A stretch of DNA of 64,000 bases from Asterias rubens (lineage: Eukaryota), in the NCBI RefSeq assembly GCF_902459465.1, contig NC_047074.1, positions 620,001 to 684,000 of the forward strand. Reading direction: 5' to 3'. The notes beneath the pieces are model-generated. The model was not told the origin of the DNA and ran no database searches. It was given only the letters and a program-made list of their open reading frames with translations. This document shows, piece after piece, positions 43,613 through 50,826 of this stretch (positions are counted from its first letter, which is position 1; the number at the start of each line of letters is the position of its first letter). A program made the translations under genes and the position numbers.

Positions 43613-46015
43613 ATGGGGCTCTCCGCAGCGCTAGCCCGTACAGCTCTCGTTACGATACTGGTCTGTGTCTGTTTGAGGCCCGGTGTTATAGCACGGCCTC
43701 TGTCTAACTCTTTTTCAGTATCGGCGAGTGAATCCGCTGAGCAACATCAAAGAGCCGACTTTGACTTTGTGGTGAGTAAACCGTTCCTTTCACTGAGGGG
43801 TTTTCAAGAGAGAAGGGAGGAAGTTTCGTACCCAAATATTCCTATCATTGGACAGGGGTGGGGGCGTGCGTATCATGCCCCCCCCCCTCACAAACCTTTG
43901 TCTTAAATCGGAAGTTACAATTGTTTGACACAATGGTGCGATTTCCGTGCGTCTCAGTTTCCAAACCCTCAGTTTCCAAACCCTCAATCTCCAAACCAGA
44001 GTGAATATCCCACACTCTCCATCGATATTATTCTTTAATGTTTTTGGTTTGAACTTCGAATATGAACCACGTAACTTCAATCTCGTCCGAGAAGAAGTAG
44101 GCCTAAGTGAGTTGATTCTGATTTGGAAGAAAAAAATTACCCTTTGGAGGAAAGGAAGTTTCTAAAAGTGCACTACGCTAGTCTTCCTTTGGTTTTGTTT
44201 ATTTTCCAACAATATTAAACAAGCACAGGCTGTCCAGGGAAGGGCAAAAGTAAAAAAAAAAAAAAACTGTCATAAAAAAAGATGTGCACTCCCAGACCTA
44301 GCTCATAAAAATACCCATAGCATAAGACCTAATAATAAAGGTGATGGTACAATTAGGAGAGTCGGTGCTTATGTAATAGTTTTTGTAAAAGTGATTTATA
44401 AATGATGCAGTACATGAAATTTACCAACACATTATTTTTTTTGCAGAAACAACTTCTCCACGAGCGCCATGCAGCCAACCAAGAGAACACCATCAAAGAT
44501 AGAGTTTTCACAAATGTTGACGACGGAGCCTACGTCACAGAAGCAGACTACGGCCATCCAGAGAAGCGTGAATGGGTAACATGGCCATTGGGTGACCATA
44601 GTCAGCAAGACTCGAATGAGAACCATGATCATGACCATGATGGTCATCAATGCCATTGCATGCATACCAAGCCATCTACTGAGAAACCGACGCCTACTAA
44701 AGGGCTTCCATGGGGTCCGGATCCAACACATCCAAGACCACAAACTACGAAACCACTACCATGGGGACCTGACCCAACTGTTCCCAGAGCAAAGACTACG
44801 AAACCGTTTCCATGGGGCCCGGATCCAACACCTTCGAGACCAGCGACTTCAAAGAAGACAACTACCATGGAACCGGAACCCACCACTACCAAACGTCTTA
44901 CAACAACCCGTAGAACAACAACTACCCCGGAACCCACCACTACCAAGCGTCTTACAACAACACGTAGAACAACAACCCCGGAACCCACCACGACCAAGCG
45001 TCTTACAACAACACGTAGAACAACAACCCCGGAACCTACCAAGCGTCTTACAACAACTCGTAAAACAACCCCAGAACCGGAACCCACCACTACCAAACGT
45101 CTTACAACAACCCGTAGAACAACAACCCCGGAACCCACCACGACCAAGCGACTAACAACAACCCGTAGAACAACAACAACCCCGGAACCCACCACGACCA
45201 AGCAACTAACAACAACTCGTAGAACAACAACTGCCCCGGAACCTACAACTACCAAGCGCCTTACAACAACAACATTGGCACCGAGACCCACCACTGCTTT
45301 AATTCCGACAACTCGGCGTCCCTGGATACCTTGGCACCCGGAACCAAGTGATAGTTCCGAGAGCGGATCATGTGAAGATTCAGACAGTAAGATGAGTAAA
45401 GGCAAAGGTAGCCATAGCCATAAGCACAGCCATAACCATAGCGCTAGCCACAACCATAGTCACAACCACTGTAAGGGAAGCAAAAGTAAAGGAGGCAAAA
45501 GCAGTAAAGGAAGTAAAAGTAAAGGAAAGGGAAGTAAGAGTAAAGGAAGCAAGAGCAAGGCTTCGGGAAGCATGAGTAAAGGAAAGGGAAGTAAGAGTAA
45601 AGGAAAAGGAAGTAAAAGTAAAGGAAGTAAGAGCAAGGCTTCGGGAAGCATGAGTAAAGGAAAGGGAAGTAAAAGTAAAGGAAAGGGAAGTAAAAGTAAA
45701 GGAAGTAAGAGCAAGGCTTCGGGAAGCATGAGCAAAGGAAAGGGAAGTAAAAGTAAAGGAAAGGGAAGTAAAAGTAAAGGAAGTAAGAGCAAGGCTTCGG
45801 GAAGCATGAGCAAAGGAAAGGGAAGTAAGAGTAAAGGAAAAGGAAGTAAAAGTAAGGGAAAGGGAAGTAAAAGTAAAGGAAAAGGAAGTAAGAGTAAAGG
45901 AAAAGGAAGTAAGAGTAAAGGAAAAGGAAAAAAGAGCAAAGGAGGGAAAGGCAAACGTGATGTTCGTGATTTAATTTTCCCGCCTGTTTGGCGTCCAGTT
46001 GCCCTACCAGAGTGA
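43613..46015 (+). CDS. Unrecognised secreted low-complexity precursor A (575 aa): signal, pro, KR, His/Cys segment, PWGPDPT x3, Thr-rich repeats, His-rich segment, KGKGSKS polycation, KR, C-peptide
   Basis: Exon 1 43613-43771 (159 nt, GTG|gtgagt), exon 2 44447-46015 (ttttttttgcag|AAA), phase 0, single open frame of 1728 nt; hydrophobic leader MGLSAALARTALVTILVCVCLRPGVIA; AATAAA at about 46230. Confidence 0.88.
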
Positions 46016-46341
46016 AACGGTTTCAATCTCCGAAATTGTTGCAAAGAATGTTAAAATAATGTTAATGATTTCTTGTAAGCACGGACATTATCTAATCTAT
46101 GGAACAGAATTTACTCTTGAATTTCTTGGTATACAGTAGGTGTAACTTAAAGTTAAGTACTCTCCATTCTTTTTAGTAGAGAAGTTTTGTTCTAACCAAT
46201 TTGATCAAAATGATTGTTTTTAATCATGAAATAAAAATCAATGTTTGGATGACAGTATACCTTATCATTATTTTAACCACAGATGATTTACAAGCTACAA
46301 GTCAAATTTAAATGTTTTACTAAAGACTGCAATTATTACTG

Positions 46342-50200: not shown

Positions 50201-50826
50201 CGCCTAGTAATGGAGGTGGAGGTGGGGGAGGTGGAGGGGGTGGGGGCGGTGGGGGTGGAGGAGGTGGAGGGGGAGGTGGAGGTGGGGGAGGTGGTGGAGG
50301 CGGCGGCAACAAACCTCAGAAACCAAAGCCCAAACCTCCTAGCAATGGAGGTGGGGGAGGTGGTGGGGGAGGTGGAGGTGGAGGGGGAGGTGGAGGTGGA
50401 GGGGGTGGAGGAGGTGGTGGGGGAGGTGGAGGGGGCGGAGGAGGTGGAGGCGGAGGTAACAAACCTCAGAAACCAAACAAACCCAAGCCTAACAAGCCCA
50501 AACCTAACAAACCAAAGCCAAACAAACCAAAGCCGAACAAACCAAAGCCGAACAAACCAAAGCCGAACAAACCAAAGCCTAACAAACCGAAACCATGGTA
50601 TCCAAATTCCAGTTCTGGTAGTGGTAGTAATAGCAATGGAGGTGGTTGGCAAAGTGGTTGGCACAGTAAGGAAAGTGGGGGTAAGAGCTGGGGAAGTAAG
50701 AGCCACGGTAAAGGAAGTCATGGCTGGAAGAGCAAATACCACTCTCATGGCAAGGGTCCAAGACACGGGAGGAGTGCTGAAATGTCTATGCCAGCCGTCT
50801 GGCACCAAGTGGCTTTACCAGCTTAA
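47230..50826 (+). CDS. Unrecognised secreted low-complexity precursor B (about 651 aa): signal, pro, R, Trp-rich start, 8 poly-Gly blocks with NKPKP spacers, Cys cluster, Trp/His/Lys tail, R, C-peptide
   Basis: Exon 1 47230-47388 (159 nt, ACG|gtaagc), exon 2 49030-50826 (tgatttcag|AAG; a NAGNAG alternative lies 3 nt downstream), phase 0, 1956 nt; leader MGRLAPLARQALTTALVVIVCLNHGVLT; AATAAA at about 51493. Confidence 0.88.

What the first reader, a model, noticed from the sequence alone, without database searches (positions are those of the whole stretch)
43613..50826. Tandem pair of unrecognised secreted prepro-proteins: one conserved chassis, two unrelated repeat cores
Seen in sequence: both genes have two coding exons, a first exon of exactly 159 nt ending in phase 0, alignable leaders (MGLSAALARTALVTILV-CVCLRPGVIA-RPLSNSF versus MGRLAPLARQALTTALVVIVCLNHGVLT-RPLDNSF), exon 2 starting K-x-[LI]-L, a basic site followed by x-W-x-x-W (EKR|EWVTW; QQR|HWSKW), a repeat core, PW-x-P plus a Ser-rich linker, a His/Lys/Gly/Ser tail, and a second basic site followed by a conserved C-peptide. 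The cores are unrelated (Thr/Arg mucin-like plus KGS polycation versus poly-Gly/NKPKP). I recognise no family. Established knowledge: the sea-urchin Transformer (185/333) immune genes have a comparable leader-exon plus repeat-exon layout with Gly- and His-rich regions, and marine adhesive and skeletal matrix proteins are often Gly/Lys/His block copolymers; I see no sequence homology to either. Inference: a lineage-specific family of processed, self-assembling secreted proteins (adhesive, cuticle, skeletal matrix or antimicrobial) with a shared secretion/processing frame and interchangeable payloads.
Basis: partly seen in the sequence, partly recalled or inferred. Interest (0 to 1): 0.9.

Follow-up and report, generated by a model that had tools for sequence, protein, structure and literature searches.

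The report
Paired orphan starfish secreted repeat proteins
Two neighbouring starfish genes encode secreted, highly positively charged repeat proteins that share only a leader exon and a short tail, match no known family and have no established function; the best guess is an extracellular glue, coat or matrix material.

Summary
The two genes exist as described. Gene A is 43613-43771 + 44447-46015 (575 aa). Gene B is 47230-47388 + 49030-50826 (651 aa). Both lie on the + strand, with 159-nt first coding exons, phase-0 GT..AG introns and strong Kozak contexts.

An RNA contig from a close relative or divergent individual crosses gene A's predicted junction. For gene B, only the start of exon 2 is seen in RNA, at low depth; its junction is not shown.

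The shared "chassis" is narrower than claimed:
- The leader exon (54% identity, z = 21) and the last ~25 residues (P-x-V-W-x-x-V-A-L-P, z = 11) are clearly homologous.
- The Trp/Ser/His tail is marginal (z = 3).
- The "basic site + W-x-x-W" is no better than chance (z = 1).

Synonymous divergence is near saturation (dS ≈ 1), so the duplication is old.

Pfam, three word-indexed protein searches, an exhaustive HMMER search of 1.84 billion proteins, two metagenome scans and the ESM Atlas found no relative. The only hits were the same gene in two seawater metagenome assemblies.

My reading: a starfish-restricted family of disordered polycationic secreted proteins, probably extracellular material. 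The function is inferred, not shown. An untested lead is the Thr-rich footprint protein Sfp12 of Asterias rubens. The scan's other notes on this locus cover the same DNA, not other DNA.

The parts
43506..43612 (+). Gene A 5' UTR (minimum extent)
   Evidence: The RNA contig in X1 starts at 43506 and runs into exon 1. There is no upstream ATG. The Kozak context is ACCATGG.
43613..43771 (+). Gene A exon 1 CDS, 159 nt, residues 1-53. Signal-peptide-like residues 1-27 (43613-43693), then RPLSNSF and the start of the acidic pro-region.
   Evidence: It is 54% identical to the gene B leader. P0001 from a seawater metagenome is the same exon.
43772..44446 (+). Gene A intron, 675 nt, phase 0, GT..AG
   Evidence: It is skipped by the X1 RNA contig and has zero RNA depth across it, apart from a small low-complexity patch.
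44447..44665 (+). Gene A exon 2, non-repetitive start. Pro-region to EKR (residues 54-94), then EWVTW and an Asp/His/Cys segment (residues 95-126).
   Evidence: It is covered by RNA contigs in X1, X2 and X3. AlphaFold gives coil at pLDDT 60.
44666..44866 (+). Gene A: three 17-aa P-W-G-P-D-P repeats (residues 127-193)
   Evidence: TRF period 51; repeat family D7.
44867..45313 (+). Gene A: mucin-like core of eight PEPTTTKRLTTTRRTTT units (residues 194-342). It is 49% Thr, has net charge +20 and carries 16 dibasic sites.
   Evidence: TRF period 54 x 7.7.
45314..45469 (+). Gene A: PWIPW plus an acidic Ser linker (residues 343-368) and a His-rich segment (residues 369-394, 9 His)
   Evidence: It aligns weakly with the gene B tail (z = 3.2).
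45470..45958 (+). Gene A: Lys/Ser/Gly polycation (residues 395-557; 61 K, 51 S, 41 G; net +62) ending in KGKR
   Evidence: TRF period 78 x 5.5. One unit-like copy lies in the gene B tail at 50670-50718 (family D4).
45959..46015 (+). Gene A C-peptide (residues 558-575, ...PPVWRPVALPE) plus the stop codon
   Evidence: It aligns with the gene B C-terminus (z = 10.7). Seven amino acids are kept despite synonymous changes in 5 of those 7 codons.
46230..46235 (+). Gene A candidate poly(A) signal AATAAA
   Evidence: 215 nt after the stop codon. Not verified by reads.
47230..47388 (+). Gene B exon 1 CDS, 159 nt, residues 1-53. Signal-peptide-like residues 1-28 (47230-47313), then RPLDNSF.
   Evidence: It was not covered by RNA in the four runs laid.
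47389..49029 (+). Gene B intron (predicted), 1641 nt, phase 0, GT..AG. It contains dispersed-repeat fragments.
   Evidence: Predicted from splice sites and paralogy with gene A. The junction was not seen in RNA.
49030..49191 (+). Gene B exon 2 start: charged pro-region (residues 54-107) ending in QQR
   Evidence: The X1 RNA contig covers 49033-49208 at depth 3.4. AlphaFold predicts two helices at pLDDT 63.
49192..50589 (+). Gene B core (residues 108-573): HWSKWTNGWGGGW, then eight pure poly-Gly runs of 26-50 residues alternating with (NKPKP)n spacers. C-D-C-D-C-C lies at 50047-50064 and the core ends in a 9-unit NKPKP run. Net charge +50.
   Evidence: The 277 Gly codons use all four synonymous codons (entropy 1.72 bits) with no interruption.
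50590..50775 (+). Gene B tail (residues 574-635): PWYP, then a Ser/Gly linker and a Trp/His/Lys/Gly/Ser segment ending in RHGR
   Evidence: The alignment to A's residues 331-385 is weak; one D4 unit-like copy lies here.
50776..50826 (+). Gene B C-peptide (residues 636-651, ...PAVWHQVALPA) plus the stop codon

Best explanation
These are two real paralogous genes from an old tandem duplication in a starfish.

Shown:
- Each encodes a protein with a cleavable-looking signal peptide.
- A mildly acidic pro-region follows the signal peptide.
- Next comes a very long, low-complexity, strongly cationic body: net +76 in A and +56 in B after the signal peptide.
- Each ends in a basic site followed by a conserved 16-18-residue C-terminal peptide.
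- The gene structure, the paralogy of the two ends and transcription and splicing of gene A are also shown.

Inferred mechanism:
- The conserved leader exon takes both proteins into the secretory pathway.
- The Thr-rich core of A is O-glycosylated like a mucin.
- A furin/convertase-type enzyme trims the C-peptide, and perhaps the pro-region.
- The released polycations act outside the cell as material, for example a glue, a mucous or cuticular coat, or matrix. They would bind by complexing with polyanions such as sulfated glycans, through His and Trp contacts, and in B through association of poly-Gly blocks spaced by stiff cationic Pro-rich segments.
- The conserved C-peptide is a sorting, processing or assembly handle, not the payload.

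Evolution: the bodies arose by independent repeat expansion on a shared frame. A's Lys/Ser/Gly array probably expanded from a tail segment that B keeps in single copy.
For: - Gene models and splice sites.
- RNA contig across 43771|44447 with no intron coverage.
- Leader homology, E = 2e-13 and z = 20.9.
- C-terminal homology, z = 10.7, with amino acids kept through synonymous changes (pS 0.82 against pN 0.24).
- Leader dN/dS about 0.37 at dS about 1.1. Six synonymous and six non-synonymous differences between the window and X1 over 288 coding nt.
- Signal-peptide features, charge and composition by segment.
- 277 uninterrupted Gly codons using four synonymous codons. This indicates selection on the residue rather than pure triplet slippage.
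- A unit-like copy of A's Lys/Ser/Gly repeat in B's tail.
- ESM Atlas nearest neighbours are only compositional look-alikes of secreted glycoprotein or glue types (Sgs-3-like, polysialoglycoprotein, mucin-like G protein), all below 0.75.
- Fragments of gene A exon 2 occur at 100% identity in two marine metatranscriptomes. The gene's DNA occurs in two seawater metagenome assemblies. This fits expression in eggs, embryos or larvae.
- Starfish footprints are reported to contain a Thr-rich, repetitive, domain-less protein, Sfp12 (PMC9382459).
Against: - No SignalP or ProP run was possible.
- No protein-level, tissue or stage evidence exists. The tissue of run X1 is unknown.
- Gene B's exon 1 and junction are not seen in RNA, and B is about 20-50 times lower than A in X1.
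- The metatranscriptome contigs could in principle be DNA carry-over.
- The basic site before the mature part of B (QQR) is a poor convertase site. The shared 'basic site + WxxW' is not above chance.
- Sixteen dibasic sites in A's core and a conserved C-terminal peptide would also fit a multi-peptide precursor.
- Known starfish footprint proteins are mostly large, Cys-rich and multidomain, unlike these.
Confidence: 0.4

Rival explanations
1. Peptide precursor. The conserved C-terminal peptide (DVRDLIFPPVWRPVALPE in A, SAEMSMPAVWHQVALPA in B), released at KGKR or RHGR, would be the active product, such as a pheromone, hormone or sperm- or larva-directed signal. The repeat bodies would be spacers or by-products. 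In A the 16 KR/RR sites could also chop the core into many short Thr-rich peptides.
For: - The C-peptide is the most conserved part outside the leader, and it sits directly after a basic site in both genes.
- Starfish do have genus-restricted tandem families of secreted proteins with conserved signal peptides and convertase sites that act as pheromones, the Acanthaster attractins (PMC11957666).
- The ESM Atlas lists apidaecin-type and polysialoglycoprotein-type multi-peptide precursors among the look-alikes, at low scores.
Against: - A spacer of 460-530 residues kept free of frame-breaking or interrupting changes is costly for a spacer. Examples are the 277 Gly codons with mixed synonymous codons and the regular 26-aa Lys/Ser/Gly units.
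- There is no amidation signal and only one copy of the peptide per precursor.
- Dense O-glycosylation would block cleavage in the Thr core.
Confidence: 0.15
2. Host-defence polycations. The proteins would be secreted antimicrobial or anti-fouling agents of the epidermis, coelomocytes or eggs. An acidic pro-piece would mask a cationic Gly/His/Trp/Lys-rich product, as in Gly-rich and His-rich invertebrate antimicrobial proteins.
For: - Acidic pro-region followed by a strongly cationic body.
- Trp-flanked Gly runs in B and His-rich blocks in both.
- A conserved prepro region with divergent mature parts is typical of antimicrobial peptide gene families (established knowledge: the frog dermaseptin 'secretory cassette').
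- The gene layout resembles sea-urchin Transformer genes.
Against: - The pro-region charge (-4 and -2) cannot mask +76 and +56.
- The products are far larger and more repetitive than known antimicrobial peptides.
- There is no homology to any such family.
- No immune-induction data exist.
Confidence: 0.12
3. Biomineral matrix proteins. The proteins would be occluded in, or template, the calcite ossicles. The Lys/Ser/Gly array would act like silaffin-type polycations and the Asp/His/Cys patches would bind ions.
For: - Lys/Ser/Gly composition with regular K spacing. A sibling note, s1-175556, raised the silaffin likeness.
- Echinoderm skeletal matrix proteins are often Gly/Pro/Asn-rich, low-complexity and lineage-specific (established knowledge).
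Against: - Calcite matrix proteins are typically acidic, not +76.
- Gene A RNA and DNA occur in plankton samples, where starfish stages carry little skeleton.
- There is no C-type lectin or other skeletal hallmark.
Confidence: 0.08
4. Gene B is a decaying or barely used duplicate. It may be transcribed without being spliced as modelled, so only gene A is a working gene.
For: Exon 1 of B and the junction were not covered in four RNA runs, and exon 2 reached only depth 3.4.
Against: - A 1797-nt open frame persists through extremely mutable repeats.
- The start codon, Kozak context and splice sites are all intact.
- The leader and C-peptide are conserved at dS about 1.
- The RNA contig begins 3 nt inside the predicted exon 2.
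Confidence: 0.1

Closest known systems
Drosophila salivary glue genes Sgs-3/Sgs-7/Sgs-8 (68C cluster); from my own knowledge. The ESM Atlas lists 'Sgs-3-like' as a compositional look-alike at 0.66.
   Same: Both are tandem paralogues that share N- and C-terminal parts and one small intron just after the leader. One member carries a large Thr-rich, basic, O-glycosylated repeat core (PTTTK-type) that the others lack. Both are secreted in bulk as extracellular glue.
   Different: There is no sequence homology. The Sgs C-terminal part is Cys-rich. Here the shared C-terminus is a short Pro/Val/Trp peptide after a basic site, and both members carry huge cores of different kinds.
Vertebrate SCPP gene cluster (enamel, milk and saliva proteins); from my own knowledge
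   Same: Both arose by tandem duplication. Both have a conserved signal-peptide exon and phase-0 introns. The bodies diverge into unrelated low-complexity sequences with material functions.
   Different: SCPP is a vertebrate family of many small exons with a conserved SxE phosphorylation motif, and its proteins are acidic or Pro/Gln-rich. These genes have two exons, their products are polycationic, and the single SxE in A is not kept in B.
Sea-urchin SpTransformer (185/333) genes (PMC4204807 listed; features from my own knowledge)
   Same: Both have a two-exon layout with a leader exon and a repeat-bearing second exon. Both have Gly-rich and His-rich regions and occur as clustered paralogues in an echinoderm.
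   Different: The leader profile found no 185/333 protein among 1.84 billion proteins. There is no RGD. The first exon here also encodes 25 residues beyond the signal peptide. The cores are pure poly-Gly/NKPKP or Thr/Arg plus Lys/Ser/Gly, not the element mosaic. 185/333 is known from echinoids only.
Asterias rubens footprint proteins Sfp12a/b/c and Sfp14 (Algrain et al. 2022, PMC9382459)
   Same: These are starfish secreted proteins without any annotated domain. Sfp12 is described as a repetitive, Thr-rich, heavily O-glycosylated sequence made in both adhesive cell types. It is hard to assemble and hard to place in the genome.
   Different: The Sfp12 fragments are 425-442 aa of repeat, whereas A's Thr core is about 150 aa. 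No Lys/Ser/Gly or poly-Gly part is mentioned.
Acanthaster attractins (PMC11957666)
   Same: This is a genus-restricted tandem family of starfish secreted proteins. Identity is highest in the signal peptide, convertase sites are conserved, and there are no homologues in other starfish.
   Different: Attractins are small (~90-100 aa) non-repetitive proteins with demonstrated pheromone activity. No sequence relation was tested or expected.
Polycationic adhesive and biosilica proteins: sandcastle-worm Pc proteins, mussel foot proteins, flatworm Mlig-ap2 and diatom silaffins; mostly from my own knowledge
   Same: They are also Lys/Gly/His/Ser-rich, disordered secreted polycations. They work by complexing with polyanions or surfaces, and they are often made as repeats cut or spaced at basic sites.
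   Different: There is no homology. There is no Tyr/DOPA chemistry here (2 Tyr in each protein). Uninterrupted poly-Gly runs of 26-50 residues are not a feature of those proteins.

Membership tests
SpTransformer (185/333) | Sequence similarity of the leader and of the element mosaic to known 185/333 proteins | tested here: not met
   The leader profile A1, searched against 1.84 billion representatives, gave only the same gene from a metagenome plus four repeat artefacts. Only the leader was searched; the bodies were not compared with 185/333 proteins. Pfam was blank.
SpTransformer (185/333) | Two exons: a leader exon plus one exon for the mature protein | tested here: met
   Many unrelated secreted-protein genes share this layout.
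SpTransformer (185/333) | N-terminal Gly-rich region with an RGD motif, followed by a His-rich region | tested here: not met
   Neither protein has RGD. Gly-rich and His-rich parts exist, but in a different order and form.
Starfish footprint protein Sfp12 | Sequence similarity to OP067648-OP067650 | not testable with these tools
   The sequences are not held: there is no supplement text and the companion paper is not in the library.
Starfish footprint protein Sfp12 | Thr-rich repetitive sequence with no annotated domain | tested here: met
   Gene A residues 194-342 are 49% Thr in eight 17-18-aa units. Pfam was blank. The feature is compositional and not specific.
Neuropeptide/prohormone precursors | Signal peptide, then bioactive peptide(s) flanked by mono- or dibasic sites, often with C-terminal Gly for amidation | tested here: inconclusive
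   A basic site precedes the conserved C-peptide in both genes. There is no amidation Gly and only a single copy. The precursor is 575-651 aa, mostly repeats. Cleavage was not tested.
Vertebrate SCPP family | Signal-peptide exon, all introns in phase 0, and a conserved SxE motif near the start of the mature protein | tested here: not met
   The phase-0 intron and leader exon are met. SxE occurs once in A (S-A-E at residues 41-43) and not at the aligned place in B. There is no homology. This is an analogy only.
Silaffins | Diatom precursors made of Lys/Ser-rich peptides separated by RR[IN]L cleavage motifs | tested here: not met
   The Lys/Ser/Gly composition is similar, but the array has no RRIL/RRNL spacers and there is no homology. 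The resemblance is compositional only.

The most novel reading that the evidence does not exclude
This would be a previously undescribed, starfish-restricted family of material-forming secreted proteins built on a swappable frame: a leader exon plus a C-terminal handle. One member would be a natural block copolymer of pure polyglycine (eight runs of 26-50 residues) and cationic Pro-rich spacers. The other would be a mucin-polycation hybrid. Together they would form an egg, larval or tube-foot glue or coat by complexing with polyanions, and the conserved C-peptide would control granule sorting or assembly.
Probability: 0.3. Interest if true: 0.7.

Novelty: new variant of a known kind. Interest (0 to 1): 0.5.

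Why it matters
If the proteins are made as modelled, gene B is among the most extreme natural polyglycine proteins. It is 46% Gly, with uninterrupted runs of up to 50 residues kept by selection. Gene A couples a mucin-like core to a +62 Lys/Ser/Gly tail. Both are ready-made designs for wet adhesives, coatings or coacervates.

The pair also shows how a conserved secretion and processing frame can acquire wholly different repeat bodies after duplication. It may account for some of the 'unassemblable, domain-less' components reported in starfish adhesive footprints.

Neither gene has a counterpart in the protein collections searched. Genes of this type are probably under-annotated in echinoderm genomes.

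Tried and rejected
- Pfam on both exon-2 products and both leaders: nothing at E <= 1.
- The search for homologous proteins, three searches, all blank. The queries were gene A exon-2 residues 1-80 in full-length context, the same 80 aa as a short query to catch transcript fragments, and an alignment of the two leader ORFs.
- Exhaustive HMMER search with the two-leader profile. It returned only P0001, a genomic read-through ORF of gene A's own exon 1 from a seawater metagenome. The other four hits were multi-stretch repeat artefacts and were rejected on inspection.
- Two scans of JGI metagenome contigs, with the leader profile and with gene A's N-terminus: blank.
- ESM Atlas for both proteins: only compositional neighbours at 0.52-0.74.
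- The search of earlier findings by sequence and by words: blank.
- Promoter, UTR and intron comparison of A against B. Nothing is shared except the exon 1 coding sequence and a dispersed repeat downstream of both genes. There is therefore no evidence of shared regulatory DNA or of recent gene conversion.
- Single-sequence AlphaFold models of the two non-repetitive exon-2 starts: low confidence and no common fold. I ran no fold search because the models are too weak.
- Bindin, asterosap, ARIS and neuropeptide precursors were considered from memory and dropped, because none of their hallmark cores or Cys patterns is present. These were not formal tests.
- The minus-strand poly-Pro ORFs and the two other + frames across gene B were rejected as by-products of the G-rich repeat. 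Only the Gly frame joins the leader in phase and ends in the conserved C-peptide.
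Full report
**What is in the sequence**

- Gene A is 43613-43771 plus 44447-46015 (575 aa).
- Gene B is 47230-47388 plus 49030-50826 (651 aa).
- Both are on the + strand, and 1.2 kb separates A's stop from B's start.
- Both first coding exons are 159 nt and end in phase 0.
- Donors are GTGAGT and GTAAGC. Acceptors follow long pyrimidine tracts.
- Both start codons sit in ACCATGG.
- The window has no N and holds no third copy of the leader (tblastn).

**Transcription**

In run X1 (labelled 'RNA?', organism A, 2014), a 395-nt contig of depth 61 covers 43506-43771. It continues at 44449 with two intervening letters, AG. This is the predicted junction 43771|44447 with AAA changed to AGA (K54R).

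The intron is uncovered. Exon 2 reaches summed depths of 100-200.

The contig differs from the window at 12 coding positions, six synonymous and six not. DNA runs of organism A hold only about a third of the window's 31-mers. Organism A is therefore a close relative or a divergent population, not the sequenced individual.

Two marine metatranscriptomes (X2, X3) hold single contigs of gene A exon 2 at 100% identity.

For gene B, only one 176-nt X1 contig (49033-49208, depth 3.4) was laid. Exon 1 and the junction are not shown. Gene B's model therefore rests on intact signals and on paralogy with A.

**How much of the 'chassis' is real**

| Region compared | Result |
|---|---|
| Leader exons | 26/48 identities, E = 2e-13; z = 20.9 against shuffles |
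| Last 25 residues | z = 10.7 |
| PW-x-P / Ser linker / His-Lys-Gly-Ser tail | z = 3.2, largely compositional |
| Start of exon 2, including 'basic site + W-x-x-W' | z = 1.0, not above chance |

- In the final 12 codons, seven amino acids are kept while five of those seven codons differ synonymously (pS 0.82, pN 0.24).
- One unit-like copy of A's Lys/Ser/Gly repeat lies in B's tail at 50670-50718. This hints that A's array expanded from an ancestral tail segment.
- Single-sequence AlphaFold models give two helices for B's pro-region and coil for A's, both at low confidence.
- At the DNA level, only the exon 1 coding sequence aligns (67% over 107 nt). Promoters, introns and UTRs do not, apart from a dispersed repeat downstream of both genes.
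- Leader dS is about 1.1 with dN/dS about 0.37.

The duplication is old. The two ends have been held by purifying selection while everything between them was replaced.

**Anatomy of gene A**

| Residues | Segment |
|---|---|
| 1-27 | Signal-peptide-like: R9, 12-residue core of mean hydropathy 2.8, V-I-A before the likely cut |
| 28-94 | Acidic pro-region ending in EKR |
| 95-126 | Asp/His/Cys patch |
| 127-193 | Three PWGPDP units |
| 194-342 | Eight PEPTTTKRLTTTRRTTT units: 49% Thr, 16 dibasic sites |
| 343-368 | Acidic Ser linker |
| 369-394 | His-rich block |
| 395-557 | Lys/Ser/Gly array, net +62, ending in KGKR |
| 558-575 | 18-residue C-peptide |

**Anatomy of gene B**

| Residues | Segment |
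|---|---|
| 1-28 | Signal-peptide-like |
| 29-107 | Charged pro-region |
| 108-573 | Trp-studded start, then eight uninterrupted Gly runs (26-50 residues) alternating with (NKPKP)n spacers; central CDCDCC; closing nine-unit NKPKP run |
| 574-635 | Ser/Gly/Trp/His/Lys tail ending in RHGR |
| 636-651 | 16-residue C-peptide |

Net charge after the signal peptide is +76 in A and +56 in B.

The 277 Gly codons in the runs use GGT, GGA, GGG and GGC (entropy 1.72 of 2 bits) with no interrupting residue. The Gly residue itself is therefore conserved. The runs are not a fresh single-triplet slippage product.

The other open frames across the repeat are by-products of its composition.

**Relatives**

No relative was found:
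- Pfam was blank.
- Three word-indexed searches of 5.8 billion clusters were blank, two of them sized to catch short transcript or ORF fragments.
- The exhaustive HMMER search of 1.84 billion representatives with the leader profile found only P0001.
- Two JGI metagenome scans were blank.
- ESM Atlas neighbours are compositional only, scoring 0.74 or less.

P0001 is a genomic ORF that reads from gene A's exon 1 into its intron. Its contig, from an ENA seawater metagenome assembly named SOLA22-1 ... METAG, is about 99% identical to window 43459-44216. A second member comes from a sister assembly. The remaining four hits are multi-stretch repeat artefacts.

Notes by other follow-up agents on this genome call it a starfish. 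I did not test that myself.

The blanks show that no annotated or collected protein shares the leader or A's N-terminus. They do not prove absence from unannotated echinoderm genomes.

**What it most likely is**

I am highly confident (about 0.9) of this part: two real paralogous genes for secreted, largely disordered, polycationic repeat proteins of a taxonomically restricted family.

My best mechanistic reading (about 0.4) is extracellular material:
- The proteins enter the secretory pathway through the conserved leader.
- A's Thr core is O-glycosylated.
- A convertase trims at the conserved C-terminal basic site.
- The product acts as a glue, coat or matrix through polycation-polyanion complexation, His and Trp contacts and poly-Gly association.

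This reading rests on composition, on block regularity maintained by selection and on analogy. The plankton RNA and DNA signals fit an egg, embryo or larval product.

Starfish footprints are reported to contain a domain-less, Thr-rich repetitive protein, Sfp12, that resists assembly (PMC9382459). I could not compare sequences.

The rivals are:
- a precursor whose real product is the conserved C-peptide, compare the Acanthaster attractins (PMC11957666);
- host-defence polycations;
- skeletal matrix proteins;
- gene B being a little-used duplicate.

**Comparison with known systems**

The closest parallels are analogies, not memberships:
- the Drosophila Sgs-3/7/8 glue cluster, with shared ends and a Thr-rich basic core in one member;
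- the vertebrate SCPP cluster, with a leader exon, phase-0 introns and divergent low-complexity bodies;
- frog 'secretory cassette' peptide genes;
- sea-urchin Transformer genes, with a two-exon layout and Gly- and His-rich parts.

Membership in Transformer fails on leader homology and on the RGD motif.

**Verdict**

- The claimed chassis shrinks to two conserved ends.
- The function is unknown but constrained.
- This is a new family of a familiar kind of gene. Gene B's polyglycine architecture is its most unusual feature.

The scan's sibling notes (s1-175499, s1-175539, s1-175556) describe this same stretch, not other DNA.

Noticed in passing
window 5492-5537 (-), with ORFs 5692-5850 (-) and 6397-6711 (-): Rfam finds a full-length histone 3' UTR stem-loop (RF00032, 38.8 bits against a gathering score of 34, E = 7.5e-8). 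It lies about 155 nt downstream of minus-strand ORFs that look to me like exons of a rhodanese-type protein, not a histone. It could be a non-histone gene with a histone-type 3' end, or a chance match.
   Followed up: partly
window 48679-48711 (intron of gene B): A 33-nt stretch is matched by many RNA contigs at 90-97% identity. Summed depth reaches about 5,800 in X1, and it is also present in three marine metatranscriptomes. The flanks are unlike the window. It is a fragment of an abundant, transcribed dispersed repeat, probably SINE-like.
   Followed up: no
window 46597-46663 and 50995-51061; also ~46340-46720 and ~50940-51100: Copies of one dispersed repeat lie downstream of both genes in opposite orientation (81% complementary over 67 nt; blastn 78% over 107 nt). 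Apart from the exon 1 coding sequence, this is the only DNA similarity between the two loci.
   Followed up: partly
window 43571-43595 (5' UTR of gene A): A 13-nt unit (TGAGGTACCGAGC) is duplicated in tandem. The X1 transcript differs here by four substitutions and two single-base deletions within 10 nt. This is a small hypervariable spot in the UTR.
   Followed up: no
L001 (ENA ERZ23498370, 759 nt) and a second contig in ERZ23498428: Seawater metagenome assemblies of one series hold gene A's exon 1 and intron at about 99% identity. The starfish's DNA, from gametes, larvae or shed cells, is therefore detectable in those plankton or water samples.
   Followed up: partly
window 33722-36579 (+), 63198-63542 (-), 3829-4491 (+): These are the neighbouring features. 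ABC-transporter exons include an ABC_membrane hit (E = 3e-12) and an ORF that looks like a C-terminal ATP-binding end but has no Pfam hit. There is a clathrin-adaptor small-chain exon (E = 3e-20). A 220-aa ORF looks like a non-LTR retrotransposon fragment (no Pfam hit). None is related to the gene pair.
   Followed up: partly
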